Below, one piece after another: positions 22,327 to 57,671 of a stretch of 64,000 nt of DNA; position 1 is the stretch's first letter; each line of letters opens with the position of its first letter. Both the position numbers and the translations under genes were made by a program. Location of the stretch: the NCBI GenBank assembly GCA_002269645.1, contig NIVC01000788.1, forward strand, positions 1 through 64,000. Direction: 5' to 3'. This DNA comes from Macrostomum lignano. Its lineage: Eukaryota. The notes under the pieces were generated by a model, which was given only the letters and a program-made list of their open reading frames with translations, made no database searches and was not told the DNA's origin.

Positions 22327-23313
22327 ATGAACCCGAGTTATCCTGCCCAGAATCCACCGCCTATCGGACTGGAGGGCATGCAATACGACCAGATTCCGCA
22401 GCCGGGGCCCGGGGGCTATGCTGGCTATCAGCAGCCGCAGAGTGGATATCCACAGCCTCAGCCGGGCCAGTGGCCTCAGCAACAGCCGCAGAGTGGATAT
22501 CCACAGCCTCAGCCGGGCCAGTGGCCTCAGCAGCAGCCGCAGAGCGGATATCCACAGCCTCAGCCGGGCCAGTGGCCTCAGCAGCAGCCGCAGAGTGGAT
22601 ATCCACAGCCTCAGCCGGGCCAGTGGCCTCAGCAGCAACCGCAGGCAGGCCAGTGGCCTCAGAGTCAACAGCAGCCAGGTCAGTGGCCTCAGGGTCAGCA
22701 GCAGCCGGGTCAGTGGCCTCAGGGTCAGCAGCAGCCTCAGCCGGGTCAATGGCCTCAGGGTCAGCAGCAGCCGGGCCAGCAGCAGCCGCAGCCTGGTCAG
22801 TGGCCTCAGGGTCAGCAGCAGCCGGGCCAGCAGCAGCCTCAGCCGGGTCAGTGGCCTCAGGGTCAGCAGCAGCCGGGCCAGCAGCAGCCGGGCCAGCAGC
22901 AGCCTCAGCCGGGTCAGTGGCCTCAGGGTCAGCAGCAGCCGGGCCAGCAGCAGCCTCAGCCGGGTCAGTGGCCTCAGGGTCAGCAGCAGCCGGGCCAGCA
23001 GCAGCCTCAGCCGGGTCAGTGGCCTCAGGGTCAGCAGCAGCCCCAGCAGCCGCAGCAAGGCCAATGGCCTCAGGGCCCCCAACAGCACCAGCAGCAGCCT
23101 CTTTCAGGTGGCCATGCTGGTCCGCAAGCTTTTGGTCAGCCGGGCTATGGGCAGCCGCAGCAGCCAATGGGAGGTTCGGTGCCTCTGGGACCAAACGAGC
23201 AGCGCCAGGTGACGGGACCGTACGACTTTCGATCTTGGGGCAACACAGCTTTCAACCAATCCGGTTACCGACTGACCAACTACAATCCAGGCTACCCGCT
23301 TATCAAAGCCTAG
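22327..23313 (+). CDS. Intronless Gln/Pro/Gly/Trp-repeat protein (328 aa), no recognised family
   Basis: ATG follows a TTTTCTACAG acceptor-like site. Unique N-terminus, repeats SGYPQPQPGQWPQQQPQ then QPGQWPQGQQ, unique C-terminus GPYDFRSWGNTAFNQSGYRLTNYNPGYPLIKA. Variation at third codon positions favours this frame. Confidence 0.8.
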   Translation: MNPSYPAQNPPPIGLEGMQYDQIPQPGPGGYAGYQQPQSGYPQPQPGQWPQQQPQSGYPQPQPGQWPQQQPQSGYPQPQPGQWPQQQPQSGYPQPQPGQWPQQQPQAGQWPQSQQQPGQWPQGQQQPGQWPQGQQQPQPGQWPQGQQQPGQQQPQPGQWPQGQQQPGQQQPQPGQWPQGQQQPGQQQPGQQQPQPGQWPQGQQQPGQQQPQPGQWPQGQQQPGQQQPQPGQWPQGQQQPQQPQQGQWPQGPQQHQQQPLSGGHAGPQAFGQPGYGQPQQPMGGSVPLGPNEQRQVTGPYDFRSWGNTAFNQSGYRLTNYNPGYPLIKA

Positions 23314-25384: not shown

Positions 25385-26649
25385 GCGCCAGCTAATACAG
25401 GACTTTGACGCCAATTCATGGCTTATTCACTGCGCTCTGAATAACTCGGCATGCAGATGGCGACTGACTGCCGCATGAACAGTTGCCATTCTTCTCACAT
25501 TTTTGTTTCCAGAAATTGTACGTCTCAGATAGTTTCTCCCCACTGTCGGGCTTGCATAGGGACCACACTATTCTGCATTTACTTTTAGCCGCATCTCGCT
25601 CAGGAATTGTATCGGTTCATGCTGGGACACGTTGGGACGGGCGGGGAGAAAAGGAGGGGAAGAGAAATACCTTGCTGGGCCCGTGTTGCCGATGGCAACC
25701 TCTGGGTATTCTGCATGGAACAAGCGAGCTCGTGACTCCCCTCACAATGGCCGGTTTGAGAGCTTCTGCAGAGAGAAATTGGAAGAGAGGGGAGAGAGAG
25801 GTAACCGCATTCAGTAGCTTTTCCTATTCTCAAACAATTCAACGAAGCCTTCCTAGTCTTTTTTGCTGTTTTCTTTTCAGTAAACCCATTATTCTGGCCC
25901 TGCTGTTACTGGTTGCTGGGTAAACTTAAGATCTTCCTTACCACTAATCCTCTCCCCACTCCCTTCTATGACCATTGGTACGAGCGTAGTTTTCTGTGAA
26001 ATCTGTTGGCGTTGAGCTGAGCTGCTTCACTGGGTGGTTGAGTCGTGGTGGACTAAAAAATCAATAGCCTCTTGTTGCTGCCGAGACAGTTGCTGGCTAC
26101 GCCGGAAGCGGGGGAAACAATGTTGTCTGTTAGCTGTCATTTTCTATTGGACCGGTTACGGATATGACTAGGAAGCAACTTCATGCGCCTCAGTGTCTAA
26201 ACGAGCCTTTTTAAATGCATAAACTGTAATGTTGCTGATAGCATTTTTGCATCGCCCTATGCTACTTTCAGTACTAGTGTAGGTGTTTGATTACCCTAAC
26301 TGCCAGCACTTGAATTTCAAATAACCTGCTGCGCATGATTGTAAATTAATAAGTTAAGATGGCATTGGAAACAAAGATATTAGTTTTATTCGAAAAAAAA
26401 TGCTTCTCGGAATACACTTCCACACTACACAGACAAAGAAAGCTTGTTGAAGCTTTGGGGATTAGGATCAACTAGATGGCTTTGACTACTGGAATTTTGC
26501 TTTTTTGTTTCAGCAACCTGTGTTTGATGAGGGGAGAAGTGACTTTGAAGATTCAAGTAGCTACTTTTTTAAGATGCAGTCTGTTAGCTTTTTTCTTTTG
26601 CATTTCAAATGCCATTGGTGAGGGTGTGAGGTAGGAGTCGCAGTTGTGC

Positions 26650-27040
26650 ATACGGGAAAGGCGTGAGGTGGGGGCCCAGCTGTGCATGGGGGAAGGCGTG
26701 AGGTGGGGGCCCAGCTGTGCATGGGGGAAGGCGTGAGGTGGGGGGGCCCAGCTGTGCATGGGGGAAGGCGTGAGGTGGGGGGCCCAGCTGTGCATGGGGG
26801 AAGGCGTGAGGTGGGGGCCCAGCTGTGCATGGGGGAAGGCGTGAGGTGGGGGCCCAGCTGTGCATGGGGGAAGGCGTGAGGTGGGGGACCCAGCTGTGCA
26901 TGGGGGAAGGCGTGAGGTGGGGGGCCCAGCTGTGCATGGGGGAAGGCGTGAGGTGGGGGGCCAGCTGTGCATGAGGGAAGGCGTGAGGTGGGGGGCCCAG
27001 CTATGCATGAGGGAAGGCGTGAGGTGGGGGCCCAGCTGTT
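26650..27040. repeat. ~36-bp G-rich minisatellite (~11 copies)
   Basis: Unit GTGCATGGGGGAAGGCGTGAGGTGGGG(G)CCCAGCT. Confidence 0.93.
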
Positions 27041-27423
27041 CCCGGAGAAAAGAACTCACGAAGAGATTTTGGGTTAGTACTGGGTTTGGATAAGGAAAAC
27101 AAAACAAATATAATTGCTTTTAAGAACAAATTGAGAAAAGGACTCGAAAGTAATAGCATTCTGACCGGAAAATTTTGTGAAATGACGTCAAATAGAGTTC
27201 CGAATTAATGGGAACGTCATGAATACTTGTACTTGTAGACTACTACATGATATTGAAAGCGCCATTCAGGCTTTTGTCATCGATGAATTAACATCGGTTC
27301 AAAGCAAAAAAGGGATGCGAACATTTATACCTTGAGTTAAGAAATGAGTCAATCCCCCTCGAATACGATTTCAAAGAAGCAAATTGGTCGCACGCAATTC
27401 TGCTTTGGAACGGATTGGTTCAC

Positions 27424-30400
27424 TTGTGTCGAGTCGGCACTGGCGACTGGCTGTAAGGTGAAGCCGCACATGCCACTCATCAGGCAGCACATATTGTAGG
27501 CGGGCTCTGATTGGCTCCTTGTCACGCGTTTTGATCGACAACCGCAGCAGAATCTGGGCGATGGGGCGAGGCGGGAAAATGAGCATTGTATACTACTGAA
27601 TATTCTTTTTTTCAACTACAAGTAACAACTCCTTTAATCATAGTATCACGTACTAACTGATATGTAAGTCTTAATAACAACAACTTAATATGACGAACAG
27701 TCATACCCACCTGGATTTAGAGTAGTTGTGATTCCTAATGGTCCAAATATGGACTGCCAGCTCGTCGTCGACAGAAGTAATGTCTGATCTTCGGCTAACA
27801 GTGGTTTGCTGAAATTCAGTTACAAAACAAGGATGAAATTATAGTTCTAAACTACTTCAAATATTAATAATAATAATTCGTAGGGAAAAACATACGAAGT
27901 ACAACAGTCACAATTTCAATCACAATGGCCAAGTTTCAATCGATATTTGGCATCTCAACAATTGTCTTTAAGCCTGAAAGTCGAAGCAATTCTCAAAGGG
28001 CCTGGGAGTCTCGCGACGCTCAAACAGATATCCATGCGCACATGGCCCCCACAAGAGCTTAATCTATTGATAATTAATACGGCGATCTCAGTAAACTATC
28101 CCCAAATTCTGCTCGAACTTTGATTAGCTTAGTGCGCAGTGGCATCTCGGCTATTCGAAAAGGTGTCGGAAGAGTTGAATGAGTTGATAGAATGAAAGTC
28201 TCTGTAATTCACAGGCAAGGTCGCTCATACGATTGCTAGCTGTTCAGAGCCCCAAGGTTCACATCTTCCTGATGCTTACTATTTAGCACATCAAAGTATA
28301 TTCGATTCGATTATCCATCAGAAGAATAAATAGATGAAGACTAAAAACTGTATGCGATTAGGGTTATGGTTCGCTAAGGCTAACGCTCCGTCCCACTCAC
28401 GCTGTCAACATTGTTCAAATTTCTGGCGGCCTGGCCGCGCAGCGCTTCACTCAGTGGCCGGGACACCGCGGGAGAGTCTCCACCGATGTGGCGCCACAGC
28501 CGTCGAGTCCTATTGACAGCCTCGCAGCTGCGCCAGGGCATGAACAGGCCGACGGGCTCTTCACAGGCGTTTCCCGAACTGTTCAGCAGCAGTTTCTCCC
28601 TTGAGTGTTTCGGAAGTTGGTAAAATCTGGCTTTAACTTTTTTAAAGATCAATGGCTGCTTTAATCGAAAACAGCGAATTCAAACTATGTACTGAAGAAG
28701 CCAGGCACATTAAACAAAATAAATTAGACCAAGATTTCAATCCCGTGTACGTGTTGACAAAATTTCGCTGTGTTCTCTTTACTGTGAAGGCGCAAATGTT
28801 CCCTCTGGAACATTCTACGAGTACTTTGTCTTTATACGTCATTTGATCTAGAAATTTCCCCACGGGCAGCAGCTATTCATTTACAAAAGCTTCACCAACT
28901 AGCTCATTGAGCTCCCCATAATGAGAAAGCTAACTGAACCTGTATTCGTCGTAGAAAATTAGCCTAGTTTTCTGCCGGGCCAAATCCGTGCCGTCCAGCA
29001 CGCTGTCATCTGAGATCACCGCCGATAGCGTCGCAGCGGGCGCCATGCCCGTCTCGCTGTCGTGGGTCTCCTTGTTAGGCAGCCGCACCAACAGCACAGG
29101 CAGCCTGACGCCAGTCTTCATGTCGACCAGATGCCGCAGATTCATGCCGCTCTGATCGCTAAACAGCCGAGCGCCCAGAAGAGTTGACAGCCAGCCGTCA
29201 ATTTGATAGTCAGCTTCGGGCAAGGTTTTCGGTTGGCCATTTTTAAACAGTATGTTGCTCCAGAACTTCCTGCCAAGGCGTCAATGAAAGGTATGCGTTT
29301 TCTGTACAAATTTAGAGGAAAAGTATACTCAAAAATATTGAAAAGACGCCACCTTTGAGTGTGCGCAGTAAATTTTATGTCAGTATTGACTTTTGAATGA
29401 CGCAACTTGCGCCACGCGACGCAGAGTTGGACTGGGTGAGGAGGGATTGGGGAGAGCGGAGGGCGAAGATTTGATGGATTTGATGGTCGAAAGACACTGC
29501 TCACTGGGACAAAGGGTGGCGACTTTTCAATGTTGCTAAGTATAGCTCGACAGTAAACGCGTCGGACTGTTGCACCATGACCCCAAGTTCAGATTCGTGC
29601 GTGGCCACATCCATTTGAGGCTTTTGCACGAAAATTAAGTACACCAAAAGTATCATCTCTCAAGGCGCAGGAATGTATATGCCTAAAAGTTGGAAAGTCA
29701 GGGGTCACTGTACACCCTGTGTGAGCGTGTGTGAGTGCCTGCGTACAGTATCCACGCTTGCATGTGCTCAGGAGCCAGCGGAATGGGCGGAATTGCCTCA
29801 GCGATGGTGGCTCTGAGACGATGTCGCCGTAGGCGTTGCTCCAGGGTGCATGCAGTCCGCCTGCAGTTATTATTATTACTGTACTAATCTGTTGCATGCA
29901 AATGTGACAATGGGCGACACGGATACGAAAAAGCTCGCAGCGAATACGCAAATTCATCCAAAAAGCCATCGCCTAGTGCTTGCTGTTTACTGTTTACTGT
30001 TTACTGTTCAGGGCGACCAAATGTTCGACTGAGACGGTTTTCAAACAAGTCTTCTTTCTTTGCCGGTGAGGTAGTATTTCCCGAGTGAGAAATCATTTCT
30101 GTTTGAAAGCCTTAAGCTCAAATAAAAAGGCCCTTGTTCGACGCTTATCCCCTCTGGGAAAGCCTCTTGATGGATGATGGTTAACGAACGATTTTACTAG
30201 CTGTGTCTTCATAAGGTCATTTTTAAGGTCAAGATCCCATCCTCTTTTCACTGCCGGCTATTTCCTAGTTTACCCAGACAGAATGGAGACTACTTTACGA
30301 GCGTAGTAAAAGGAAAGACGGCGAGCGACAAACGATAGCGAGAAATCGTAGAAAGTACCCTATTGAAGGCACGAAACCGTTTTGACAGGTCCGCAGAATT

Positions 30401-33400
30401 TCACTGCTCTGATCTGCCAAATACGATCAAATACTCAAGTACGAGCGTATTGATAGTTGGCCAAATTTTTGGCAGGCAAATAGCGACCGTAAAATGTCGG
30501 GCTCTCCACTCTTATTAGTAGCGCTAAGTTCAAATATGCATGTCGAATAGGTCAAGAACCAACATACTTATTAGAACACCAATATAAACCCTTGAGAAGT
30601 GCTTACCTGCACTGCTGATTCATGTTCAACCGACTCGTCTGTAAGAATTTGCCAATATCGACTATTTCATTTATCACACGCCTTTCCATACCGAAAAACG
30701 TACACAACTCAAACATCATCTCGGGTAATTCCACCCAGGCGCGTCGACTTCCCAGAAACTTTACCGACTGGATTCCATTCTCTGGAATTGTTTTAAATTT
30801 TCAGTAACTTTTCTCAACACTTAGGCACTCGCTAGAATAAACAATGCTTAATCTATTCTTGTCGCAAAAAATGACAGCATTTTTCATCTACATGTTGGAA
30901 GTAGTCAGTTCAACATCTTACCTTTTTTAATATCGTAAATTTTGCCCGGCGTAATCTTTTTCGGTGCCCATTCCTGAGCCTCAATGACGCTGGGCCGGTT
31001 TGCATTGTTCCTCTGACTTCTGTAGAACTCTCTCTGAAATTGCTTCAAGATGCAGTTGACAGATTTACAGATTAACGTAGCGCTAAACTTTCACTGTTTT
31101 ACTTTCCTAAACCTGGCTTGAATATTTTATATTTTCTTTACTACTAAAAGCTACCAGTACAGGAGCCACTGTTTACGGTGTTAAAGACATTAGCAAAGAA
31201 ACAATTCAGCTATAACAATGATAAAACCCACAGTTGTTGATGGCGGAGGAGCGGCGACTCCAGCGGCATTTGCTTCAACTCCAGCCCTATTAAGCAGTTG
31301 CTGACTGTCCTGACTGCCATGGCCGTCTTCGGTGAGCCTGGCATCAAGCATTGTGCGCCACTCGCCTCCATTCACGCGCATTTCATTTGTCCCGCCCATC
31401 GCCCCCTCCGTCTCTTGTCCATTTCTTGTTGCCTGCAATTGAACGCCAGCTTCACTCGCGTCATCCAAAACCAGCTGATCCCGCTGCGGCCTTAGTCGCT
31501 TAGGCGTCCATTCGACAGCAGATGTTGACAAGACGTCAATCGCATCCGCGTTAACCTCACATTCCATTAGATCGCCGATGGCCCCTTCTCGGCTCTGACT
31601 GCTTTTCCGCGCTGTCGCCTGCTGATTGTTGACGTCTTTGGCAAGACTGCGCAGCCGGCGGCTTGCTGTCGCTTGAGGTTCGTGACGGACGTCAAGTACC
31701 CCGGTCGGTGCGATGGTCCTGTTAAAACAAGCGATAAACTACTTTTACTTGCCGAAATTTATACACCTTTTATATTTTCAGCCATCTGAATGCTACGACA
31801 GGCTCACCAATTGTTGTGAACCAACGGCTCCATCAGCGTCTCGCTGGATTCCTCCAATTCGAACAAGCCTCGCATGTGCTCCACCGTCAGCCTGGTTGTC
31901 TCCTTGGTGCCAGCGAGGTAGCAAAGCATGCCGATTGCCAACCGAACCACTAAATGATCCGGAGAGTTTAGCTCAGTGTTGATTAGTCTGAACAGCTTTG
32001 GCAGCGGGTAGGTCTCAACCCGGCGGGCCAGCCGGGCCACAGCGGCCAGGATTAAGTGCGACCGGGTGAACGGGCGCTTGAGCCGGATTTGAGTGATCTT
32101 TGCAAGCTCTTCGTTGTTGTTACGTATCGGATTCTTGCGGTGGTCTGAATTGTTTAACGAATTCCTGCTATGAACGATAATATTCTCAGCCCAGGACTTG
32201 TCGTCAGCGGTAGGTAATAACTACTGAGCTACCTAAACCGTAGACCACACCAGAGAACCTATTTGCACATACTTATAAGATATTCACTTATGGAAATTAT
32301 TTTAGCGTTGCTCGATAGTTATTAGCAATTGGTATGGACTTGTGGGCTCCCGGTGCAACGCTTTCGGCGAAATCGTCCCACAACCAGCGATTCCACCCAC
32401 TCCGCTGCCTCCTGAGCACGTACGCTCGTTCAAGCGCCAATACTGTGTGCGCAGGCACGCACAGTCGTACTCATCATACACACGATCACACAGGGTGTAC
32501 AGTGGCCCTGACTTGCCAATCGTCAAGCATTTACACTCTCCGTGCCTTGGGAGCTGGCCCTTGTGAGTGTGAATCGCACGAGAACCATGGCTAACTTTCG
32601 TTCAAAAGCCTCAAATGAATGTGGTTGCGCACATGTCGCTAGGATTAGAAGTCAAGAGTTTAAGTATCTCCCAACTCTTCACAATTGAGGCAGCAGTGCG
32701 CGCTATGAAGTAAGATTCAAGTTCAAGTGTTTAGAAGTCTCTTGAAAGAGTCTCGAGGAGTCGTGCAACAGTCAGGAATGAGCGTGCCAAGCTAGGAGCG
32801 AACTCAAGGAGTTAGGAGTGAATGAGGCCGCGTTAGGAGTCAAGTGTTTAGGAGTGAGCGTATTATACTCGTAAAACGAGGACTGTGGGATTCCACTCCT
32901 AACACCTAAGTCAAGCGTTCAAGAGCCGATATCAATCAAGAGTAAGTTAAAGAAAAGCCTGACTGATTGAATTCTGTTTCTGATAAAGATTGCATCACAA
33001 CAGGCTTTTTATTTATCGTCAATCTGAATTTCGACGATCAGTGTGGTAACCATTTTGTTAAATTCAAAAGATTTAATCTAAAAAATCTCTAACGAAATTC
33101 AAAGTTAATCTACGAGCTAGTTTCATAGCACGGGCCCCTGCTCTGCTCCCTTTAACACGTACCTAATTGCCCCGCAGCAAACGAAAAGGCAAACTTTAAC
33201 AGCAAACTTTTCCCCCAGACCACTGATTTCTTACAAGTTCGTACTTACAGGTGCACACAATGAATTCCATCTATAAATTTTAATTGAAATCCATCTATAA
33301 ATTTTTAATTGAAACCGTTTTAACTGAAACGACATTTTAAAAATTTGTTAATAACTATAGAATGTACCGTTTTTTATTCCTTATTGGTACTCACTTCCAT

Positions 33401-35477
33401 ACGTATAGCACAGGTTGAGTAGAATATCCAGCGGGTGCAGCACCAAGGTCGCGTTGCTGGCGTAGGCATGCAGACAGGCATCGAGCAGGCCGAAGCCGGA
33501 GACAGTGTAAGCCGGAGTGTTTTGTTCCACTAAGTCTTTGGCGGTGTAGAATTCACGACTAGCCCACATGTAGCGCGGCTTCGACCCATTGGCCTTGATG
33601 TACCTCGGAGTGAAGTGTTTTAGAAAAGCTGCGTCGCATGGAACTCTGGATAAAATCGATTGGATTCAAACAAATTTTTTTAAATAATGGGAAGTAAATC
33701 CAGTGGCGCGCCAAATCAAGTGCTGCGCCAGAACTACTGCAATACTATATAATACATGTATTGTGCAAGTGTCCTAATATAGTCGCTCCCAGGGATTGGA
33801 CTATCAAGATCTACACACGTCAGCAAGGCAGTTCCATCGCTCAAGCCGCGCGCTCTCCCAGCACATGCACTCGATTATGCAACCTATCAAGCAGATTGAT
33901 TGAACTTATGAACTTTAGCAAGAAGTGGAAATAGCACGGCAGCAATCCTAATGAGTACGTTGGGTTCTTTTGTCATTCATTCTCTTATTAATAAGTCCAC
34001 GCATTGAGGAGAGCCTCCAGCAAGCAGTGCCTGAGCTAAGCGACCAGAGCGTGCAGTATCTTAAAGCTTCTGATGCTCCAATACATTTGAATGTCTTTCT
34101 TCAAGTTAATTATTAAATCTAGACCGAGTCGGAAAACTTTCTTACTTCGGATACTGCACCTAGCGCATGACTGGGGGGGGGGGGCAGAGAAGGGGAGAGA
34201 TGATAGAGAATAGAGAGGAGAAACGAGGACCGAGAAGCGAGAGGCGAGGCAAAAGAGCAGACGAGACCAGAGGCATTCATTTAGCACCGCAGACACTCAT
34301 TTTAGCGCCGCAGGCACTCATTTTAGCGCCGCAGGCACTCATTTTAGCGCTGCAAGCACTCATATTGGCGCCGCAGGCACTCATTTTGGCGCCGCAAGCA
34401 CTCATTTTGGCGCCGCAAGCACTCATTTTAGCGCCGCAGGCACTCATTTTAGCACCGCAGGCACTCATTTTGGCGCCGCAGGCACTCATTTTGGCGCCGC
34501 AGGCACTCATTTTGGCGCCGCAGGCACTCATTTTAGCGCCGCAAGCACTCATATTGGCGCCGCAGGCACTCATTTTAGCTCCACAGGCACTCATTTTAGC
34601 GCCGCAGGCACTCATTTTAGCGCCGCAGGCACTCATTTTAGCGCCGCAGGCACTCATTTTAGCGCCGCAGGCACTCATTTTAGCGCCGCAAGCACTCATA
34701 TTGGCGCCGCAGGCACTCATTTTAGCTCCACAGGCACTCATTTTAGCGCCGCAGGCACTCATTTTAGCGCCGCAGGCACTCATTTTAGCGCCGCAGGCAC
34801 TCATTTTAGCGCCGCAGGCACTCATTTTAGCGCCGCAGGCACTATATTCTGTCGCCCTGAAGCAAAATTATTGATTTCTACAAGGGGTTACAAGGTGGGG
34901 TGGGGGGGGGGGACAAAGCATTGTCATGTCCCCCAAAGCTTTTACTGTGGGAGACATATCCCCCTGTCCCCCCGGTGGCAACGCCCCTGAGGAGAGGAGA
35001 GAGGAGAGGGAGAGAGAGGAGAGATTAGAGAGAACAGAGCTGAGAAGAGTCACAAATGCCATTGTGAAGTTTCAATGGACCCGAAGGCTGGATAGAGGCA
35101 ATATGGCCCGCGGGCCGGAGATCTATCGACAAAACGAAAGCAGTGACTACAAAGCATTTTGCTTTTAACAATTTTTGTGCAATAAAATTGATTTCATTGA
35201 TCGGTGTCTCACCATCGGAGGAGGGGTTAATATTGCCGATAAACCAATTCAATTTAAGGTTGTAATGCGTATTTATGCATATATTTACGGTAATATACTC
35301 AATATTTGTTTAATTCACACGCTTCCCAGTTCAATTCACAAGCTACCTTTTTTAATTGGTGGCCTACCTGCAACTGCTGACGTCCACGATGGGCTGATCG
35401 CTTGCCTCCTGAAGATCAACGCACTCAGAGTCGTTGTCTTCAACATGCCGGTCTCCCCAGGACAGGATGTGCGTCAT
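27424..35477 (-). CDS. Multi-exon gene, DUF4419-like protein (at least 767 aa; 3' end unresolved)
   Basis: Exons 35477-35368 (GCCACCATG), 33645-33395, 33270-33249, 32167-31808, 31718-31232, 31033-30922, 30781-30607, 29269-28940, 28626-28401, 27808-27711, 27553-27424 give one open frame with compatible GT-AG phases; a further exon probably starts at 26517. Motifs GFGLLDACLHAYASNATLVLHPLDILL and KFWSNI...YQIDGWLSTL resemble my recollection of DUF4419. The gene model is firmer than the family call. Confidence 0.72.
29324..29544. mobile_element. MITE, same TIR family as 8419-8691
   Basis: Left TATACTCAAAAATATTGAAAAGACGCCAC; right GTGGCGACTTTTCAATGTTGCTAAGTATA. Confidence 0.7.
29545..29880 (+). 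mobile_element. tRNA-derived SINE (copy 2), 5' end abutting the MITE
   Basis: GCTCGACAGTAAACGCGTCGGAC head remnant; body AGGGGTCACTGTACACCCTG...GTGCCTGCGTACAGTA...GATGTCGCCG...CCAGGGTGCA; (TTA)n tail. Confidence 0.75.
32320..32600 (-). mobile_element. 5'-truncated SINE (copy 3)
   Basis: Reverse complement CAAGGCACGGAGAGTGTAAATGCTTGACGATTGGCAAGTCAGGGCCACTGTACACCCTG matches the SINE body at ~8850-8920. Confidence 0.75.
34150..34990 (+). mobile_element. Non-autonomous element carrying a 21-bp minisatellite (~27 copies, 34280-34850)
   Basis: Unit GCACTCATTTTAGCGCCGCAG; ends ...CCCCTGTCCCCCCGGTGGCAACGCCCCTG. Homologous eroded copy at 4260-4545. Left boundary approximate. Confidence 0.7.
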
Positions 35478-42055: not shown

Positions 42056-43264
42056 GAGTTCAGGCAAAACCGACAATATCTTGAAAGCAGACAGACCACA
42101 ATCAGATGTTCTGAATTTTAAGCACACACTGATATTGTTTTGCATCTTTGAAATATTTTCTTGGTTCTGCCTTTATTTTAAAAAATCGAAAGAAATTTCT
42201 CCAGACTCGCAAAATATTTATTTTCTGTTTTTTGGCACAAAAAAATAAATAAGGCAGAACTTGAAAAGTCTTGCTGCATTTCATCACCTTCGAATGTATA
42301 ATTATTTCCTTGTTAGAACTGGTTTTGTTTGTCAATAGATCGTTTCGATCTGCCACTATTCCATATGTCAGGTTTATAAACAGGTCTGCCACTATTCCAT
42401 ATGCCAGATTTTTAAGCTGGGCCATAGCTACTAATACTACTATATTATATCTGAGTCAGTAGTATAATTCTACTATCACTCTACCTTTGAGAGTATTTCT
42501 CACTCGAGACGCGATCGGTTTTCTCTGCTGCCATCCGCATTGTCATTCAGTTCGTGAGTCACGCTCTCATTGCATTTCAATCATCCATTTATCACTTTCC
42601 ATTGTTATTGTTCATCGTCTATAATGCTTTCATACGGCTGGGAAGTTGTTTTCAATTCTTTCAATTTTCCACTGTTCCGGAGGACAATGGGCAATTTACT
42701 TCCAAGCCCCCCATTTGCTGGTTCTGCTTCTGTGTCCCTTGAAGCGGTAAAATCTGCTGCAATACTATCTTGACAAACAATGGCCGCCACAGCCGGCACT
42801 TTTTCTCCACAGGGTCTGAATGAGCTGCTTTTTAGACTTTTAGCTTTTCAGCTTCAGTTAGAAATCTACTTCTTTCTTTTGTTTCTTGTGGGATGTCTCC
42901 CACAATGACACAATGACAATTTCACAATGACATGAGAAATAGATACTCATCTCCCACAATGAGTAGCTATTTCTTCTGTTTTGAGCATTAACAGTCTGCT
43001 GGTACTCAGTTACCTGTCGTCTATGCCTGAGATACCTGATGTTAGTTATTATACCTTGAGTATAAATGGTGTATGTTAGTCTATATCTGTGCGTACCTTT
43101 CAGGTGCTTGTTTTCGTGTCGAGACCCGTGTGAATCAAGGAACACAGAACCCATTGATCTCGGTGAGCTTCATGTGAGCTCGAAGCTATGAATTTGGTCT
43201 CCTGTGACCTCTGCTAGGTTCCTGTGAATTCTACGAGTACAATTTTCCTGTGATCTCAATGAAA

Positions 43265-43655
43265 TTCCCCTGAACACGACTAGATTCCTGTGACCTTGAT
43301 AAGATTCCTGTGACCTTGATAAGATTCCTGTGACCTTGATAAGATTCCTGTGAACCCAGTGAGATTCCTGTGACCCTTGATAAGATTCCTGTGAACCCAG
43401 TGAGATTCCTGTGACCCTTGATAAGATTTCTGTGACCTTGATAAGATTCCTGTGACCCTTTATAAGATTCCTGTGAACCCAGTGAGATTCCTGTGACCCT
43501 TAATAAGATTCCTGTGAACCCAGTGAGATTCCTGTGACCCTTGATAAGATTCCTGTGAACCCAGTGAGATTCCTGTGACCTTGATAAGATTCCTCTGAAC
43601 CCAGTGAGATTCCTGTGACCTCGATAAAGTTCCTGTGAACCCGGCGAGATTCCTG
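43265..43655. repeat. 20-bp minisatellite (mirror copy 61790-62080)
   Basis: GATTCCTGTGACCTTGATAA / GATTCCTGTGAACCCAGTGA units. Confidence 0.92.
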
Positions 43656-43984
43656 TTAGTTTAGCCAGTTGACAACCATTAAATTTACTGGAATATTCCT
43701 TAGTTCTAACGCAGTGGCGATCACTGTAAAGGATAAAATCATAGCACACTGGTATTTCGGCAGACTGGACGGTTAAGATAAAGTTTCTAACCAGCCTTTG
43801 ATGTCTACCGCTTGCTTTAGTTGTAGGACTTGTGTTTGCTGATCTGGCATCAAATTCAGCGGGCTCAGTTAAAAGCACTCAGCTCAGCTTTTTTGGTGCC
43901 TAAAGTACATTTCTTGCGACTCGGGTACCGACTGCTTCCCAAGATTTTCCATCGCTCCAGTGGCACCTCCTGTACCGACTCCAC

Positions 43985-44635
43985 TACCAGAGGCGCCTTC
44001 GCTGCCTCTTCCGTGGCGCCTCCACTGCCTCTTCCGTTGCGGCTCCACTGCCTTTTCTGTGGCGCCTCCACTGCCTCTTCCGTGGCGCCTCCACTGCCTC
44101 TTCCGTGGCGCCTCCACTGCCTCTTCCGTGGCGCCTCCACTGCCTCTTCCGTTGCGTGGCGCTTCCACTGCCTCTTCTGTGGCGCCTCCACTGCCTCTTC
44201 TGTGGCGCCTCCACTGCCTCTTCTGTGGCACCTCCACTGCCTCTTCCGTTGCGTGGCGCTTCCACTGCCTCTTCCGTGGCGCCTCCGCTGCCTCTTCCGT
44301 GGCGTAGCGCTTCCACTGCCTCTTCCGTTGCGTGGCGCCTCCACTGCCTCTTCTGTGGCGTAGCGCTCCCACTGCCTCTTCCGTGGTGTGGCGCTTCCAC
44401 TGCCTCTTCGTGGCGTGGCGCTTCCACTGCCTCTTCGTGGCGTGGCGCCTGCACTGCCTCTTCCGTGGCGTGGCGCTTCCACTGCCTCTTCCGTGGCGTA
44501 GCGCTTCCACTGCCTCTCCCGTGGCGTGGCGTGGCGCTTCCACTGCCTCTTCCGTGGCGTAGCGCTTCCACTGCCTCTTCCGTGGCGTGGCGCCTGCACT
44601 GCCTTATCCGTGGCGTGGCGCTTCCACTGCCTGCA
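43985..44635. repeat. 21-26-bp GC-rich minisatellite (mirror copy 60655-61430)
   Basis: CCACTGCCTCTTCCGTGGCG(TGGCG)CCT units. Confidence 0.93.
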
Positions 44636-45721
44636 CTGCAAGGCAGAGTTTCTTATTCTAAAACAAAGCCGTGACAAAAGCAAAATTCTGAACAGATTTT
44701 GCAACCATGTTACTGAGAGAAAGCATGCGATTCCCTAGGGATTTTCATAAAGGATTAGCAAAACTGTTATCTGTCGTCTTAGCAGCTGGTTAATCTACTC
44801 TTAAATTTCAGAATCCGTCCTGCGTGAAAACCTGTCGCTAATCCGACAAGAATTGCTAAGTTGGGCTAATCCTCTTAGCGCTCACGGCAACAAGAGGGGA
44901 TGGGCTCAACCGTTGCTTTCAACAAATGACGCTTTAAAAACTATGTTGGTAAAAAAGTTAATTATTAAAATTGAATCGTGCTGGCGATGGCTTGGTCGCA
45001 TAAGTAATATTCCATTTTTGCAAATTGAATTCGTTCAGCTGCGTTGACGTTCTAACTTTGTCGTTGACAAGTTTTCTTCTATCAAATAAAGTTGCTCTGT
45101 AGTTGAATCAATTCTGGTTGGGACAAACTGTTTTTCAAACTGTAGCAGCTGTCTGTGGCATGATCTGAATTTAGCTACCATAAATACAGCATTAGTGGAC
45201 GAGAAGTTTCGCAGTTTGGCCGAATTCGAATTGCGAAAAGGTATACAGGGTGCCTTTAAAGCATGGGTATCAATGATACTATACTATAGAAATTTTTGTC
45301 CCAGCTACACTTTCATAGCAAGGGCGAGAGTATGGGCGAAGAGTCAAAAGCAGCCTAGAAAGCAAGAAATAGGAGCAACAGTGACCTATGGTCAAAAGAA
45401 CATTTCGGGCGGTTAACGACATTAGCGGGCATGGTACAAAAATGTCAGGGTACAATGTTTTTAAGAGATCACTGGATTCATACGAGTGTGTCATCACTGC
45501 TGCGCTAAACGATCTGGCTTGAGTGTATAGAAGCGCGTTCTAGCTTAAGAAGCTTTTGGGAAAGAGGGAAGTTCAAAGTCGATAGAGGTGTGCAAGCATG
45601 CAGAATAAAAATGTGCTATCAAAGACTTCTAAGCAAGCGTCCTTGGTTGGTCAGTGGTCAAATCTGTTGTGCTACGGTTGTCTACTATCTTCATTTTTGC
45701 ATCTCCGCTTCAACCCACTTG

Positions 45722-47313
45722 CTAGCTGATCTCTTCACCGCCACGCCTGTTGAGCTCCTGAGCCTCGGCGCCTTGGTTGACGCCGTCTCTGTCAGCAACC
45801 TCCGCCGCGGCGTTCCCGGCCTCTCTCCTTGGCAGCCAGGACAGAAAGATGTCCGAGAAGGTGTCGCGGAACTGCTTAGACATGGTAGTGTAAAGCACGA
45901 AATTCACGCTGTTGTTAATCAGAGAGAGCAGGTCCAGCAGGTCGCCCATTGGCGCGTACACATTGCTGCTAAATTGGTCACTGACGAAGCACAGCAGCGA
46001 CATGATGCCTTGCGGCAGCTCTGTAATTATGAAGATAATCACTATAGCCAACAGCATCATTGTTGTTCGCTGCTCTCTGCTGTCCTTCTTCTGCTCCCGC
46101 TTGGACGATTTGCCACTGTTTAGCAGCTTCTTGCGCCGCCTGGCTGCCTTGGACATCTCCACGATGAGAAGGATGGTCATCACGGAGAGCAGCAGGCAGG
46201 GCACGATCTTGTACAGGATGGCGATGGTCCAGTAGTTGGAGCGCATCAGCAGCTCGCTAAAGCCATCTGGAGTTGCTACAAAGTACACCGTGCGATTAGT
46301 GACAAAGCTCTGGCAAGCCCTGACCGAGTTCATCAGATAGTTGGGCACGTTGGTCAGGCAGAACAATCCGTAGGTGGCGGCGATGCTGATGTAGGCGTTG
46401 CGCTTACTGGCCAGCTGGGCACCGCGGCTCGGCAACGCGATGTACAGATAGCGAAACACGGCCAGGGCCACCGTCAGCCAGCAGGCCACGGTGTGCAGCA
46501 CCAGCACCAGGCTGATGGTGAACAGAGAGTACACAATCCACGGGTAAACGTGGGTGTGAGGCTGCTTCAGAGCGTCCTGCGGCGACAGGATGATGAAGTG
46601 CAGAACCTGTCGTAGGCAAAGTGAAACACCCTGTCAATTTGTTCCGGCTTTCTTTTAAAGGCAATAAAAAAGCAAGATCATGAGACGGAAAAGACATGGA
46701 CGAAGTAAAGCAGCATGGTGAGCAGAAGGGACAGAGTCACGCAGGCTCTAGACGAAGCAAAGCAGAATGATGAGAAGGACAGTCACGCACTCTCTGGACG
46801 AAGTAAAGCAGAATTATGAGCAGAAGGGACACAGTCACGCAGGCTCTAGACGAAGCAAAGCAGAATGATGAGAAGGACAGTCACGCACTCTCTGGACGAA
46901 GTAAAGCAGAATTATGAAAAGAAAGGACACAGAGTCGTGCACTCTCTGGATGAAAAATAGCAGAATGATGAGCAGAAGGGACATACACTCACCTGGAAGA
47001 AATAAAGCAGCATGGTTAGCAGGTCAGCCACAGCCACAGCAATCAGGATGGTATTGACTGACGAGGCCATGCTCTTCCTGGTGAGCACGACAATGTTAGC
47101 CAGGTTGGCCACGACTCCGAAGACGCAGAGCAGAACGCAGAGGTAGCCATGGACGGGGGCGTACCACGCTTGGAAACGGACCAGACCGGTGTATTGGGAT
47201 GGAGCGGCAGCTGACAGGTTGGAGCAGTCCCGCTCCAGGTCTCCGAGGCTCACTGATGCGCCCATTCTTAATCGGATTTGTCTCGATCTGCAAGGCGAAT
47301 AGAGGCGATCCAT
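45722..47313 (-). CDS. Rhodopsin-class neuropeptide GPCR, myosuppressin receptor/dmsr-like (intact copy, ~401 aa)
   Basis: Exons 47313-46993 (alternative ATG 47265) and 46606-45722, phase 0. Motifs HGYLCVLLCVFGVVANLANIVVLTRKSM, AVADLLTM, LHTVACWLTVALAVFRY, YKIVPCLLL, RTTMMLLAIVIIFIITELPQGI, DLLSLINNSVNFVLYTTMSKQFR. Confidence 0.9.
46690..46985. repeat. ~46-52-bp tandem repeat in the GPCR intron (mirror copy 58310-58605)
   Basis: Sense-strand unit approximately CTGCTCATCATTCTGCTTTGCTTCGTCTAGAGCCTGCGTGACTGTGTCCCTT, ~6 copies. Confidence 0.85.
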
Positions 47314-47626
47314 TATTCCGTATCTATACGGTAGAACCTCAGTTGCCGTGCAGCATAGCAACCAGTAGACATTATCCAGACTGCTTCCACCCTCATTCAG
47401 CCTTCCCAGAGGACCTATTGTCCCCTTTTCAAGAAGCTAGAGTCCAAATTTTCCCATCTAAAAAACCCAGCCGGTCACTGGGTGAGAAGTCAAGCAATCT
47501 TTGGCCCCAAGTCTTTCCAATTTCTAAACTGCCTTACTCGCACGCGCTCGTAATTGATCGACACAGGCGTATGCGGGTAAAAGAAATCAATCCAAGGTGT
47601 TAAGCTGGATAAGTTAGCCGGCAATG

Positions 47627-47678
<52 letters not shown>

Positions 47679-47904
47679 AGTGAGCAGCCCAGGGCAGGCA
47701 GGTACCCACACGTGAGGCCCCCGCAATATCCGGAGAGCTCTGGGCGCACTGTTGTGAATCGTGAGAAACTCAAGAAAGCTGAATAAGCTCGGGTAGGTCG
47801 GCTCATTCCACCACGGCGACTCCTTCATTTGGCAGGGTAATTAAAAATAAGTTGAAGCTGTAAGATGAATCACTAACTAATTTAAGAAAACAATGGACTG
47901 CGCC

Positions 47905-48560
47905 TATTACTTTCCCTCTCACCCCCACTTCCCCTCTTCCCTCTCACCCACAGTTCCCCTCTTCCCTCTCACCCTCAGTTCCCCTCTTCCCTCTCACCCC
48001 CACTTCCCCTCTTCCCTCTCACCCTCAGTTCCCCTCTTCCCTCTCACCCCCACTTCCCCTCTTCCCTCTCACCCCCACTTCCCCTCTTCCCTCTCACCCC
48101 CATTTCCCCTCTTCCCTCTCACCCCACTTCCCCTCTTCCCTCTCAGCCTCAGTTCCCCTCTTCCCTCTCACCCCCACTTCCCCTCTTCCCTCTCACCCTC
48201 AGTTCCCCTCTTCCCTCTCACCCCCACTTCCCCTCTTCCCTCTCAGCCTCAGTTCCCCTCTTCCCTCTTACCCCCACTTCCCCTCTTCCCTCTCACCCCC
48301 ACTTCCCCTCTTCCCTCTCACCCTCAGTTCCCCTCTTCCCTCTCACCCCCACTTCCCCTCTTCCCTCTCACCCCCACTTCCCCTCTTCCCTCTCACCCTC
48401 AGTTCCCCTCTTCCCTCTCACCCCCACTTCCCCTCTTCCCTCTCACCCCCACTTCCCCTCTTCCCTCTCACCCCACTTCCCCTCTTCCCTCTCAGCCTCA
48501 GTTTCCCTCTTCCCTCTCACCCTCAGTTCCCTCTCACCCCCTCTTCCCTCTCACCCCCTC
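47905..48560. repeat. Polypyrimidine minisatellite (mirror copy 56702-57385)
   Basis: TTCCCCTCTTCCCTCTCACCCCCAC / ...CACCCTCAG units of ~25 bp. Confidence 0.92.
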
Positions 48561-49554
48561 TTCCCTCTTAACCTCACTTCTCACCTCTCAACCACTCTCC
48601 CTCTCTTACCTTGCATCTTTTCTCTCCTACTCTCCCTTCAATCTCCCTCCCTCCCTCTCCCGCTCCCCTCTTTGCAGCAATTCAATTTTAATTTAACCTA
48701 CATTCCAACCAGTTTTAACTATCTGTTTTTGTAACAACCTTAATGTTTTAGCAGCAGGAAGTATCCAGCAGTCTACAGCCATCACTCACTGTTGATCCGG
48801 ACTCTGCCCATCCCCCAGACAGCCAGCTCCCATTGCCGCCCCATCCTTTCCAGTAATTAATTTCCCATTTAATTTGTTGATTGCGTCGGTTGGCATATCT
48901 GGAACTGCAGCTCCAGTCAACGACTTTCATTTTCACCAATTTGATTGTTTGCCTTGCTAGCTTCTCGAATATGAATATATAAAATATGTTTTGCAATTCC
49001 ACCACAGCCCGCCAGTTTAGAATCCAAATGAATGCAGCAGTGAATCTTCATCACTCTGGCATCCTTCTTGCCTGCATCTTCACACCGGTCGACTGACCCT
49101 CTCTCGGCTTCGAGGTATGGGATATAAAATTAATTTTCTATTTACCTGCCCGTCTTCCTGTAGGGTCTGGGGCGCTGCTTCAAAAATACTTTTAGGCCAC
49201 TGAGCGACCTGCCTCAGCATCTCCGCTCTGTCTCTCTGCATCATCTGCCCGCCAGCTGCGATGCAGTTATCCAAACAGGACCCCGGTGCCGACAGCGGTT
49301 CAACAATCGTGATGCCGAACCGTCCCGCCTCCTGTAATACCCTCCGCAAGGTTTGCTGTGTAGAACTGTATAATATATTCAGACCTATCGCTCCTAACCC
49401 AAGGATTTTTGACAATTGATCATAGCCAGTTTATTGTCCTTAGTCACTGCTTGCTAATCAACATCGTTCTAATTGGGCCTTTACGTACTTATGCGAATTA
49501 ACATTAAGCCTTTGCGCAAGATTGATTCACGCATTACATGACTCACACATTCCC

Positions 49555-51345
49555 TGATTCACGCTTTCCTTGATTCACCCATTCCCTGATTCACTCATTC
49601 CCTGATGCACCCATTCCCTGATTCACGCTTTCCTTGATTCACCCATTCCCTGATTCACTCATTCCCTGATGCACCCATTCCCTGATTCACGCTTTCCTTG
49701 ATTCACCCATTCCCTGATTCACTCATTCCCTGATGCACCCATTCCCTGATTCACTCATTCCCTGATGCACCCATTCCCTGATTCACTCATTCCCTGATGC
49801 ACCCATTCCCTGATTCACGCTTTCCTTGATTCACCCATTCCCTGATTCACTCATTCCATGATGCACCCATTCCCTGATTCACGCTTTCCTTGATTCACCC
49901 ATTCCCTGATTCACTCATTCCATGATGCACCCACTCCCTGATTCACGCTTTCCTTGATTCACCCATTCCCTGATTCACTCATTCCCTGATGCACCCATTC
50001 CCTGATTCACTCATTCCCTGATGCACCCATTCCCTGATTCACGCTTTCCTTGATTCACCCATTCCCTGATTCGCTCATTCCCTGATGCACCCATTCCCTG
50101 ATTCACTCATTCCCTGATGCACCCATTCCCTGATTCACGCTTTCCTTGATTCACCCATTCCCTGATTCACTCATTCCCTGATGCACCCATTCCCTGATTC
50201 ACGCTTTCCTTGATTCACCCATTCCCTGATTCACTCATTCCCTGATGCACCCATTCCCTGATTCACGCTTTCGTTGATTCACCCATTCCCTGATTCACTT
50301 ATTCCCTGATGCACCCATTCCCTGATTCACTCATTCCCTGATGCACCCATTCCCTGATTCACTCATTCCCTGATGCACCCATTCCCTGATTCACTCATTC
50401 CCTGATGCACCCATTCCCTGATTCGCTCATTCCCTGATGCACCCATTCCCTGATTCACTCATTCCCTGATGCACCCATTCCCTGATTCACGCTTTCCTTG
50501 ATTCACCCATTCCCTGATTCACTCATTCCCTGATGCACCCATTCCCTGATTCACGCTTTCCTTGATTCACCCATTCCCTGATTCACTCATTCCCTGATGC
50601 ACCCATTCCCTGATTCACCCATTCCCTGATTCACTCATTCCCTGATGCACCCATTCCCTGATTCACGCTTTCCTTGATTCACCCATTCCCTGATTCACTC
50701 ATTCCCTGATGCACCCATTCCCTGATTCACTCATTCCCTGATGCACCCATTCCCTGATTCACTCATTCCCTGATGCACCCATTCCCTGATTCACTCATTC
50801 CCTGATGCACCCATTCCCTGATTCGCTCATTCCCTGATGCACCCATTCCCTGATTCACTCATTCCCTGATGCACCCATTCCCTGATTCACGCTTTCCTTG
50901 ATTCACCCATTCCCTGATTCACTCATTCCCTGATGCACCCATTCCCTGATTCACGCTTTCCTTGATTCACCCATTCCCTGATTCACTCATTCCCTGATGC
51001 ACCCATTCCCTGATTCACCCATTCCCTGATTCACTCATTCCCTGATGCACCCATTCCCTGATTCACGCTTTCCTTGATTCACCCATTCCCTGATTCACTC
51101 ATTCCCTGATGCACCCATTCCCTGATTCACTCATTCCCTGATGCACCCATTCCCTGATTCACTCATTCCCTGATGCACCCATTCCCTGATTCACGCTTTC
51201 CTTGATTCACCCATTCCCTGATTCACTCATTCCCTGATGCACCCATTCCCTGATTCACTCATTCCCTGATGCACCCATTCCCTGATTCACGCTTTCCTTG
51301 ATTCACCCATTCCCTGATTCGCTCATTCCCTGATTCACTCATTCT
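49555..51345. repeat. 16-bp-monomer satellite with higher-order patterning (~110 monomers)
   Basis: Variants ATTCCCTGATTCACGC, TTTCCTTGATTCACCC, ATTCCCTGATTCACTC and ATTCCCTGATGCACCC recur as 64-bp and 32-bp blocks. Confidence 0.95.
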
Positions 51346-51756
51346 CTTTGATTTAAACTCACTGATTCACTATCCTCGATATTTGCCCATACTCCAAAGC
51401 AATACTTTCACGGTGGCAACAGTAGCTAGTCACCGAAATAACTTACCTGATCGGAGAATTTCAGTGAGAGAGTCTGATGGTTTAAAAAAAACAAATTTCG
51501 AATTTGCAAGCCGGTACTTTTAAAACCAATCTACTTTTCGCGGCTCCACTCAGACTGGCAAAGCTGGGAACGCAGCTGCAGGAACGATCGAGTACTTGCC
51601 CCAGCAGCAGCATTTCTAACAGCGGGCCTGTGGCAGGGGCGGCGACTCTTCACTACACGCTATTGGCTGGGCTGCGGAGAGGCGATGCTAGGCAAAACTC
51701 GCTCAGTGTTCTATTCGCCATTTGTTTTTTTACGAGTAACTCTTTAGTCTAGATCA

Positions 51757-52670: not shown

Positions 52671-53024
52671 TCTCTCCATATTCCCTCTGTTTCAAAAAAC
52701 TTGCTGAACCCAAATCTAGAACATTTCTCTGGGTTTCTGTGCCATAACAGCACCGCCTCACGGCTCCTCCCGTCGCCAATCCTTGAGCAATCTTCAAGTG
52801 GCTTCTTGGACAACAATAGCAAAAGAAACACAACACTCTGCAAGCTAGCGTTTTGTCCAAAGTGATTTTTTTCATTCTTGCGCTCAACAGGGTTTAAATG
52901 TCGATCAAAGCGAAATCTGGTCTAGAAAATCTGTTTTAAAAACAGCAGAACTTGCGCCGGAACTTTGTTTGCTGGCCGATCTTCGGTAAAGCATTTTTTA
53001 AACTCTAAACCATTTAGCTAGTAC

Positions 53025-57615: not shown

Positions 57616-57671
<56 letters not shown>

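What the first reader, a model, noticed from the sequence alone, without database searches (positions are those of the whole stretch)
27424..35477. Spliced animal gene encoding a DUF4419-like protein
Seen: eleven exons splice into one open frame of at least 767 aa, with a ~160-aa low-complexity insert (31718-31232) splitting the conserved parts. In order: GFGLLDACLHAYASNATLVLHPLDILL, NTELNSPDHLVVRLAIGML, KFWSNI, YQIDGWLSTL, DMKTGVRLPV. From memory, these follow the DUF4419 pattern (GF..A...AY..H..LVL.PDD.W; FW..I; I.GWI..F), a family of unknown function that I recall mainly from bacteria, fungi, protists and giant viruses. Inference: an uncharacterised, fully intronised gene, possibly of horizontal origin.
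Basis: partly seen in the sequence, partly recalled or inferred. Interest (0 to 1): 0.72.

Follow-up and report, generated by a model that had tools for sequence, protein, structure and literature searches.

The report
Divergent DUF4419-like flatworm gene

Summary
The window is Macrostomum lignano contig NIVC01000788.1, positions 1-64000. On the minus strand at 35477-27349, ten GT-AG exons splice into a 770-codon frame. The product is identical to GenBank PAA76830.1 (hypothetical protein BOX15_Mlig005410g2), whose annotation was built from RNA-seq. The exon count (10, not 11) and the 3' end (27349, not 27424) are not.

DUF4419 homology is real but remote:
- Pfam gives 29.1 bits (cut-off 25, E 9e-7) over about one third of the profile. 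Canonical members score 257-611 bits.
- Reversed and shuffled controls give nothing.
- My own profiles recover the N-terminal and middle motifs in the right order.
- The C-terminal third is not detectably DUF4419.
- Residues invariant in canonical members (His, first Asp and Trp of PDD.W, Cys and Pro of CGIP, GSGG) are replaced.

No closer relative exists among 1.84 billion representative proteins. Three intact copies, with exons better conserved than introns, argue that it is functional.

DUF4419 itself has no known function and no fold match in the PDB. Canonical intron-bearing members occur in a hemichordate, so horizontal origin is neither needed nor excluded. Interest is low.

The parts
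35368..35477 (-). Exon 1 (110 nt): start codon at 35477, residues 1-37. No signal peptide is obvious.
   Evidence: Donor is GTAGGC. The first ATG follows an in-frame stop.
33395..33645 (-). Exon 2 (251 nt), residues 37-120. It carries the N-terminal DUF4419 motif SGFGLLDACLHAYASNATLVLHPLDILL.
   Evidence: My own HMM domain 1 covers residues 80-124 at 10.8 bits. hhalign supports it. AF2 pLDDT is 90-93 for residues 90-120.
31808..32144 (-). Exon 3 (337 nt), residues 121-233. The acceptor is caattcag|ACCACC. My first guess and any frame-breaking acceptor upstream were wrong.
   Evidence: Only this acceptor keeps the frame with the GTGAGT donor of exon 2 and reproduces PAA76830.1.
31232..31718 (-). 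Exon 4 (487 nt), residues 233-395. It encodes a polar, hydrophobic-poor, mostly low-confidence segment that expands the region between the N-terminal and middle motifs.
   Evidence: pLDDT is mostly below 50. No Pfam hit.
30922..31042 (-). Exon 5 (121 nt), residues 396-436. An alternative acceptor 9 nt downstream (31033) gives the 767-residue isoform.
30607..30781 (-). Exon 6 (175 nt), residues 436-494: ENGIQSVKFLGSRRAW..., the counterpart of the family's CGIP..TL.GT..DW strand-helix.
   Evidence: Lies within the Pfam best stretch, residues 431-524. HMM domain 2. hhalign. pLDDT 85-91.
28940..29269 (-). Exon 7 (330 nt), residues 494-604: KFWSNI...YQIDGWLSTLL, the counterpart of FW..I...GSGG..GW. 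The rest is unmatched.
28401..28599 (-). Exon 8 (199 nt), residues 604-670. The acceptor is cactcaag|GGAGAA. No similarity to anything.
   Evidence: pLDDT about 30-60.
27711..27808 (-). Exon 9 (98 nt), residues 671-703. It is skipped in an older public model (A0A1I8JHN2), which shifts the frame of exon 10.
27349..27553 (-). Exon 10 (205 nt), residues 703-770 plus the TGA at 27351-27349. The tail is Cys-rich. It resembles the family's C-terminal strands by eye and in the MAFFT/AF2 result, but this is not statistically supported.

Best explanation
Shown: this is the transcribed nuclear gene BOX15_Mlig005410g2 of the free-living flatworm Macrostomum lignano. It has ten exons and nine canonical introns, and two nearly identical further copies, as expected in this neopolyploid genome. 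It encodes a 770-residue protein with no obvious signal peptide. The core of the protein descends from the DUF4419 (PF14388) domain.

Shown: the protein is the most diverged member detectable, and has no closer relative anywhere. It is about twice the usual domain length, because polar, probably disordered segments (chiefly exon 4) are inserted between the conserved elements.

Shown: it has lost most of the polar residues that are invariant in canonical members. These are the His of AY..H, the first Asp and the Trp of PDD.W, the Cys and Pro of CGIP, the Asp of DW, and GSGG.

Inferred: canonical DUF4419 proteins are probably enzymes or small-ligand binders built on those residues. The flatworm protein keeps the hydrophobic scaffold but not that site. 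It therefore most likely acts as a non-catalytic, lineage-specific binding or scaffolding protein, with the inserts as interaction surfaces. It remains under purifying selection.

Its origin, whether vertical descent with fast divergence or old horizontal acquisition followed by intron gain, is open.
For: Identity and splicing:
- The spliced product is identical to PAA76830.1.
- The record coordinates equal the window coordinates.
- The GenBank annotation derives only from genome-guided RNA-seq assembly (PMC5730564).

Homology:
- The Pfam score is above the gathering cut-off, with clean shuffled and reversed controls.
- An independent profile gives 16.6 bits against at most 6.9 in 2000 shuffles, with two collinear domains.
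- hhalign agrees.
- AF2 is confident exactly at these elements.

Extreme divergence:
- phmmer against 1.84e9 representatives finds only the protein itself.
- Two word-indexed searches find only its own cluster.
- Canonical members score 257-611 bits.

Lost invariant residues: HMMER and hhalign alignments set against the invariant columns of 120 members.

Selection:
- All three copies are intact with identical exon structure, and pN/pS is 0.15-0.36.
- There are 8 synonymous events of 16, where 23% is expected (p=0.017).
- Between copies g2 and g3, exons differ by 0.65% and introns by 2.3% (p=2e-7). All indels lie in introns.
Against: - The Pfam match covers only profile positions 122-213 of 303, and sits just above the cut-off.
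- The C-terminal third is not detectably DUF4419 in any frame.
- A MAFFT count of retained conserved columns (30 of 75) is no better than shuffles, which give 21-36. Alignment outside the motifs is therefore unreliable, and some of the 'lost residue' calls could be misaligned.
- The AF2 model is poor (mean pLDDT 54) and depends on the alignment. It finds nothing in BFVD.
- The function of DUF4419 is unknown: no PDB fold match, no PDB sequence match, and no informative gene neighbours or domain fusions. 'Catalytic site lost' is therefore an inference from conservation only.
- The selection tests rest on 16 substitutions.
Confidence: 0.75

Rival explanations
1. The gene entered the Macrostomum lineage by horizontal transfer of a DUF4419 gene from a bacterium, fungus, protist or large DNA virus. 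It then gained nine introns and diverged. It concerns origin, and is compatible with the best explanation.
For: - The family is patchy. It is abundant in giant-virus-size contigs, insect viruses, myxobacteria and fungi.
- Transfers among amoebae, bacteria and giant viruses have been proposed (PMC7125106).
- No homologue from other flatworms or most other animals appeared in any search.
Against: - No donor-like sequence exists. Nothing reaches E<=1e-3 in 1.84e9 proteins, in viral contigs or in metagenome contigs.
- GC, GC3 and the exon/intron contrast are like the neighbouring host genes.
- Nine introns is more than the genome average of 4.9.
- Canonical DUF4419 genes with introns exist in the hemichordate Glandiceps talaboti. 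The family is therefore not foreign to animals.
Confidence: 0.3
2. The DUF4419 match is spurious. The gene is a de novo or otherwise unrelated lineage-specific orphan.
For: - The score is only 4 bits above Pfam's cut-off, and covers one third of the profile.
- hhalign probabilities are low: 5.6%, 0.8% and 6.6% in the three runs.
- A profile of 120 close canonical members gives only 8.7 bits.
- There is no structural confirmation.
Against: - Pfam E is 9e-7, and ten controls are empty.
- Three different home-made profiles all exceed every one of 2000 shuffles.
- Two separate motif blocks align in the correct order and spacing class.
Confidence: 0.1
3. The protein is still an active DUF4419-type enzyme or ligand binder that uses a remodelled site.
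For: - Purifying selection and intact copies.
- Several conserved positions are kept in the reliably aligned blocks: GF, AY, LVL, P108, D110, G438-I439, G446, W451, F496-W497, G519-W520.
- The hemichordate members also vary the second Asp, reading PDM.
Against: The residues that are strictly invariant in 120 members are replaced: His, the first Asp of PDD, Cys and Pro of CGIP, the Asp of DW, and the Ser-Gly of GSGG.
Confidence: 0.2
4. It is a transcribed but decaying pseudogene family.
For: Extreme divergence from the family, loss of invariant residues and long disordered inserts.
Against: - A 770-codon frame is intact in three copies with no indel.
- Introns are 3.6 times more diverged between g2 and g3.
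- There is an excess of synonymous changes.
Confidence: 0.07

Closest known systems
Pfam PF14388 / DUF4419, canonical members (for example Glandiceps talaboti LOC144446589, Polyangium sp. 6x1 DUF4419 protein, and giant-virus ORFs in loci L002-L012)
   Same: - N-terminal helix-strand-helix motif (GF..A..AY...LVL.P.D).
- Middle strand plus two helices (GI.S..LG...W ... FW..I ... I.GW).
- Same order of elements.
- Pfam score above the gathering cut-off.

   Different: - 29 bits against 257-611 bits for canonical members.
- 770 residues against about 310-420.
- About 160 residues of polar insert, plus further expansions.
- The invariant His, Asp, Trp, Cys, Pro and GSGG are replaced.
- The C-terminal third is unrecognisable.
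- Nine introns.

DUF4419 proteins of large DNA viruses (LbFV ORF1, entomopoxviruses, Yasminevirus, Orpheovirus, Catovirus, Marseillevirus)
   Same: They belong to the same Pfam family. The canonical animal model matches them structurally (Foldseek E 4e-23 to 6e-8; PMC5381508).
   Different: - The flatworm model does not match them.
- There is no sequence affinity to any viral member in particular.
- The viral names 'inhibitor of apoptosis' and 'eEF-3 like' are unverified database labels.
Taxonomically restricted genes of Macrostomum lignano, kept in two to three copies by the recent genome duplication
   Same: There is no detectable orthologue outside the species in 1.84e9 proteins. There are three copies (g1, g2, g3) that differ at 2-8 of 770 residues.
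   Different: Unlike a true orphan, it retains a statistically supported link to an old, widespread domain family.

Membership tests
DUF4419 (PF14388) | Whole-protein score against the Pfam profile at or above the curated gathering cut-off (25 bits) | tested here: met
   29.1 bits, E 9e-7. The three other public isoforms score 28.8-29.6 bits. A reversed copy and nine window-shuffled copies give no hit at E<=10.
DUF4419 (PF14388) | Match along the whole 303-position domain, as in canonical members (profile 1-303) | tested here: not met
   The best stretch covers profile positions 122-213 only. The N-terminal motif is recovered only by my own profile. The C-terminal 80 residues score no better than shuffles in any of three frames.
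DUF4419 (PF14388) | N-terminal motif skeleton GF..A...AY..H..L.L.PDD.W | tested here: inconclusive
   The skeleton GF, AY, LVL, P and the second D are present at residues 86-112, with a 2-residue insertion. His is replaced by Asn101, the first Asp by Leu109, and Trp by Leu112. These positions are invariant or nearly invariant in 120 members.
DUF4419 (PF14388) | Middle motifs CGIP..TL.GT..DW, FW..I and GSGG...GW | tested here: inconclusive
   G438, I439, G446, W451, F496, W497, G519 and W520 are kept. Cys is replaced by Asn437, Pro by Gln440, Asp by Ala450, and SGG by EAD512-514.
DUF4419 (PF14388) | Shared three-dimensional fold | not testable with these tools
   The flatworm model has mean pLDDT 54. 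It is confident only at the motif segments, and it depends on an alignment that forces the family onto it. It has no BFVD match. The canonical model (pLDDT 77.8) matches viral DUF4419 proteins but nothing in the PDB.
Horizontally acquired gene in an animal | A donor clade nested around the animal sequence, or foreign composition, or absence of the family from other animals | tested here: not met
   There is no relative close enough for a tree. GC3 is 0.63, within the 0.54-0.79 of the neighbouring genes. Canonical members occur in a hemichordate.

The most novel reading that the evidence does not exclude
A DUF4419 gene was captured long ago from a microbe or giant virus by the macrostomid lineage. 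It was intronised, lost the family's conserved active or ligand site, and was expanded with disordered inserts. It is now retained under selection as a new flatworm-specific non-enzymatic protein. This would be a traceable case of domestication and neofunctionalisation of a foreign domain of unknown function.
Probability: 0.15. Interest if true: 0.45.

Novelty: already known. Interest (0 to 1): 0.22.

Why it matters
It matters little by itself. The gene model, its protein and its Pfam label are already in GenBank and UniProt, and nothing about its anatomy is unusual for this genome.

It has modest value in two ways:
- It is the most diverged DUF4419 relative found here. It shows which parts of this uncharacterised, widely scattered domain survive when the invariant polar residues are lost.
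- M. lignano has working transgenesis and RNAi, so an animal DUF4419 derivative could be tested in vivo.

The function and fold of DUF4419 itself remain unknown. The family occurs in bacteria, fungi, protists, giant and insect viruses, and hemichordates, and it has no PDB relative. That is the larger open question, and this gene is a poor entry point to it.

Tried and rejected
1. My first splice guesses for exons 3, 5 and 8 broke the frame or added residues. They were replaced once the GenBank protein was found.
2. Two word-indexed searches and one full phmmer search with the flatworm protein returned only itself. Family members therefore had to be fished out with a degenerate DNA motif in viral contigs.
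3. Counting conserved family columns kept in a MAFFT alignment gave 30 of 75. I rejected this as evidence because shuffled sequences give 21-36.
4. The similarity of the C-terminus (annotated frame, exon-9-skipped frame, third frame) to the family's C-terminal strands was no better than shuffles.
5. Foldseek of the flatworm model against BFVD gave only noise.
6. Foldseek and profile searches of a canonical member against the PDB gave no significant match.
7. PHROGs, NCBIfam, PADLOC and Rfam gave nothing.
8. Gene neighbourhoods of a myxobacterial and two metagenomic members, and long family members checked for fused domains, gave no functional hint.
9. A comparison of intron positions with the hemichordate gene found none shared.
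10. Literature: only two papers mention DUF4419 and none mentions Mlig005410.
11. Scans of viral and metagenome contigs for close relatives found none.
Full report
**What is there**

The finding lies on the minus strand. Reading 36000-27000 in reverse complement and translating the three frames shows a chain of open segments bounded by AG and GT.

A first hand-built model found a single database relative: P0001 = PAA76830.1, 'hypothetical protein BOX15_Mlig005410g2 [Macrostomum lignano]', 770 residues, with PF14388 precomputed. Using that protein to correct three acceptors gave ten exons:

| Exon | Window coordinates |
|---|---|
| 1 | 35477-35368 |
| 2 | 33645-33395 |
| 3 | 32144-31808 |
| 4 | 31718-31232 |
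| 5 | 31042-30922 |
| 6 | 30781-30607 |
| 7 | 29269-28940 |
| 8 | 28599-28401 |
| 9 | 27808-27711 |
| 10 | 27553-27349 |

Their translation is identical to P0001. All nine introns begin with GT and end with AG.

The contig look-up shows that the window is NIVC01000788.1 (assembly GCA_002269645.1), positions 1-64000.

The GenBank annotation of this assembly was made only from a genome-guided RNA-seq transcriptome: StringTie/TACO, the TBONE pipeline and TransDecoder (PMC5730564). The junctions therefore have indirect RNA support. I could not look at reads.

- The start (35477), exon 4 (31718-31232) and all five quoted peptides are right.
- The exon number is 10, not 11.
- The stop is at 27351-27349, not 27424.
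- The '767 aa' equals a public isoform that uses an acceptor 9 nt downstream at exon 5. Another public model skips exon 9.
- Exon 4 is polar and poor in hydrophobic residues rather than strictly low-complexity. It is predicted with low confidence.

**Is it DUF4419?**

Pfam:
- The whole protein scores 29.1 bits (cut-off 25), E 9e-7.
- The best stretch matches residues 431-524 to profile positions 122-213 of 303.
- A reversed copy and nine window-shuffled copies gave no DUF4419 hit even at E<=10.

No search seeded with the flatworm protein found any other sequence. I therefore obtained genuine family members by scanning viral contigs with a degenerate back-translation of AY..H..L.[LIV].PDD.W. 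The eleven loci, all on giant-virus-size contigs, encode proteins that score up to E 7.5e-99 against PF14388.

Independent profiles:
- A profile of ten of these proteins gives the flatworm protein 16.6 bits, against a maximum of 6.9 in 2000 shuffles.
- It reports two collinear domains: the N-terminal motif (residues 80-124, 10.8 bits) and the middle block.
- Narrower profiles give 5-11 bits, always above every shuffle.
- hhalign aligns 203 columns in order, from the GF motif to I.GW, at E 0.0056.

I conclude that homology is real (about 0.9) but very remote. Canonical members score 257-611 bits.

**Limits**

- A MAFFT alignment seemed to show 30 of 75 near-invariant columns retained, plus matches in exon 4 and at the C-terminus. 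Shuffled sequences added in the same way retain 21-36, so that count is worthless.
- The C-terminal 80 residues do not match the family better than shuffles in any frame.
- The AF2 model of the flatworm protein has mean pLDDT 54 and pTM 0.62. It is confident only at residues about 90-120, 440-530 and 720-770. It inherits the alignment, so it is not independent evidence, and it finds nothing in BFVD.

**What has changed**

In the blocks that HMMER and hhalign align reliably, the hydrophobic skeleton and several Gly and Trp residues are kept. The polar residues that are invariant or nearly invariant in 120 canonical members are replaced:

| Family residue | Flatworm residue |
|---|---|
| His of AY..H | Asn101 |
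| First Asp of PDD | Leu109 |
| Trp of PDD.W | Leu112 |
| Cys of CGIP | Asn437 |
| Pro of CGIP | Gln440 |
| Asp of DW | Ala450 |
| SGG of GSGG | EAD512-514 |

The protein is about twice the usual length.

**Is it functional?**

The cluster holds three GenBank copies:
- g2 lies in this window.
- g3 lies on the same contig at 72162-81280 on the other strand.
- g1 lies on NIVC01000152.1.

All three keep the ten exons and a 770-codon frame with no indel. pN/pS is 0.15-0.36. Counting events gives 8 synonymous of 16, where 23% is expected (p=0.017).

Between g2 and g3, exons differ by 0.65% and introns 2-9 by 2.3% (p=2e-7). All indels, hundreds of alignment columns, lie in introns. This argues for a functional gene, although on few substitutions.

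**What does DUF4419 do?**

Nothing is known.
- Only two papers mention it. It is ORF1 of the wasp virus LbFV, with entomopoxvirus relatives (PMC5381508). It is also a candidate for transfer between an amoeba, bacteria and giant viruses (PMC7125106).
- A model of a canonical animal member (hemichordate P0105, pLDDT 77.8, pTM 0.72) has no significant PDB match: best E 0.16, with only short PAS-like fragments. It clearly matches twelve viral DUF4419 proteins.
- A profile search of PDB sequences, plus PADLOC, NCBIfam and PHROGs, gave nothing.
- Gene neighbourhoods and domain fusions were uninformative.

The family's invariant His, Asp, Cys and Ser residues and many Trp residues suggest an enzyme or ligand-binding site. 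That is my inference. From it I infer that the flatworm protein is most likely a non-catalytic derivative.

**Origin**

- The profile search returned 2898 family members. Those that carry names come from fungi, myxobacteria and the hemichordate Glandiceps talaboti.
- The Glandiceps gene has four coding exons on a 24-Mb scaffold. Its one intron inside the domain is not at a flatworm intron position.
- The flatworm gene has host-like GC and GC3, nine introns, animal neighbours and no donor-like relative anywhere.

Horizontal origin is therefore possible but unsupported. If it happened, it was ancient.

**Verdict**

This is a real, expressed, already annotated gene. It is an ordinary result, with a mildly interesting degree of divergence.

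Noticed in passing
window 42821-47628 versus 57667-62540, centre about 52-56 kb; run of N at about 55.8-56.7 kb: A near-perfect (98-100%) inverted duplication lies around a sequence gap. The DUF4419-like gene g2 (27349-35477, minus strand), its copy g3 (record 72162-81280, plus strand), the RING-finger neighbours and the Srw-type GPCR ORFs (45722-46534 minus, 58763-59377 plus) sit symmetrically in the two arms. This is either a true palindromic segmental duplication or an assembly join of two subgenome or haplotype copies.
   Followed up: partly
window 34271-34843 (intron 1): A 21-nt unit (AGGCACTCATTTTAGCGCCGC) is repeated about 27 times at 92% identity. Intron 1 differs strongly in length between the three gene copies (1722, 3143 and 2305 nt).
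   Followed up: partly
window 26626-27039: A G-rich 35-nt tandem array (11.6 copies, 94% identity) lies about 300 nt downstream of the stop codon. It creates long spurious ORFs on both strands.
   Followed up: no
window 29597-29637 and 32592-32632 (introns 6 and 2): Two copies of a dispersed repeat lie in opposite orientation (41 nt, 85% complementary, with further similar flanks around 29700-29760 and 32480-32560). It may be a MITE-like element.
   Followed up: no
window 47900-55800: Kilobases of C/T-rich simple sequence with extreme GC skew (-0.3 to -0.6) flank the centre of the inverted duplication. They give long Ser/Leu/Pro-rich ORFs that are probably not genes.
   Followed up: no
window 22327-23313 (+): An annotated 328-residue gene is made almost entirely of Q/P/G-rich repeats (PGQWPQQQPQSGYPQPQ...). 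It has no Pfam match.
   Followed up: partly
window 31033-31042 and 27711-27808: Public protein models differ by a 9-nt alternative acceptor at exon 5 (plus or minus QFQ) and by skipping of exon 9, which changes the C-terminal frame. I did not check which forms are really expressed.
   Followed up: partly
L015 10001-13077; L017 and L018: The hemichordate DUF4419 protein P0105 has a signal-peptide-like N-terminus, and its tandem paralogue P0117 does not. Several top metagenomic DUF4419 genes sit as single ORFs on Mb-size contigs with very sparse gene calls, which look eukaryotic.
   Followed up: no
BFVD hits W6JIV0 and A0A7R5WD75: Entomopoxvirus DUF4419 proteins carry the database names 'Inhibitor of apoptosis protein' and 'Putative apoptosis inhibitor'. 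The LbFV paper's best hit is named 'eEF-3 like'. I found no evidence behind these names.
   Followed up: no
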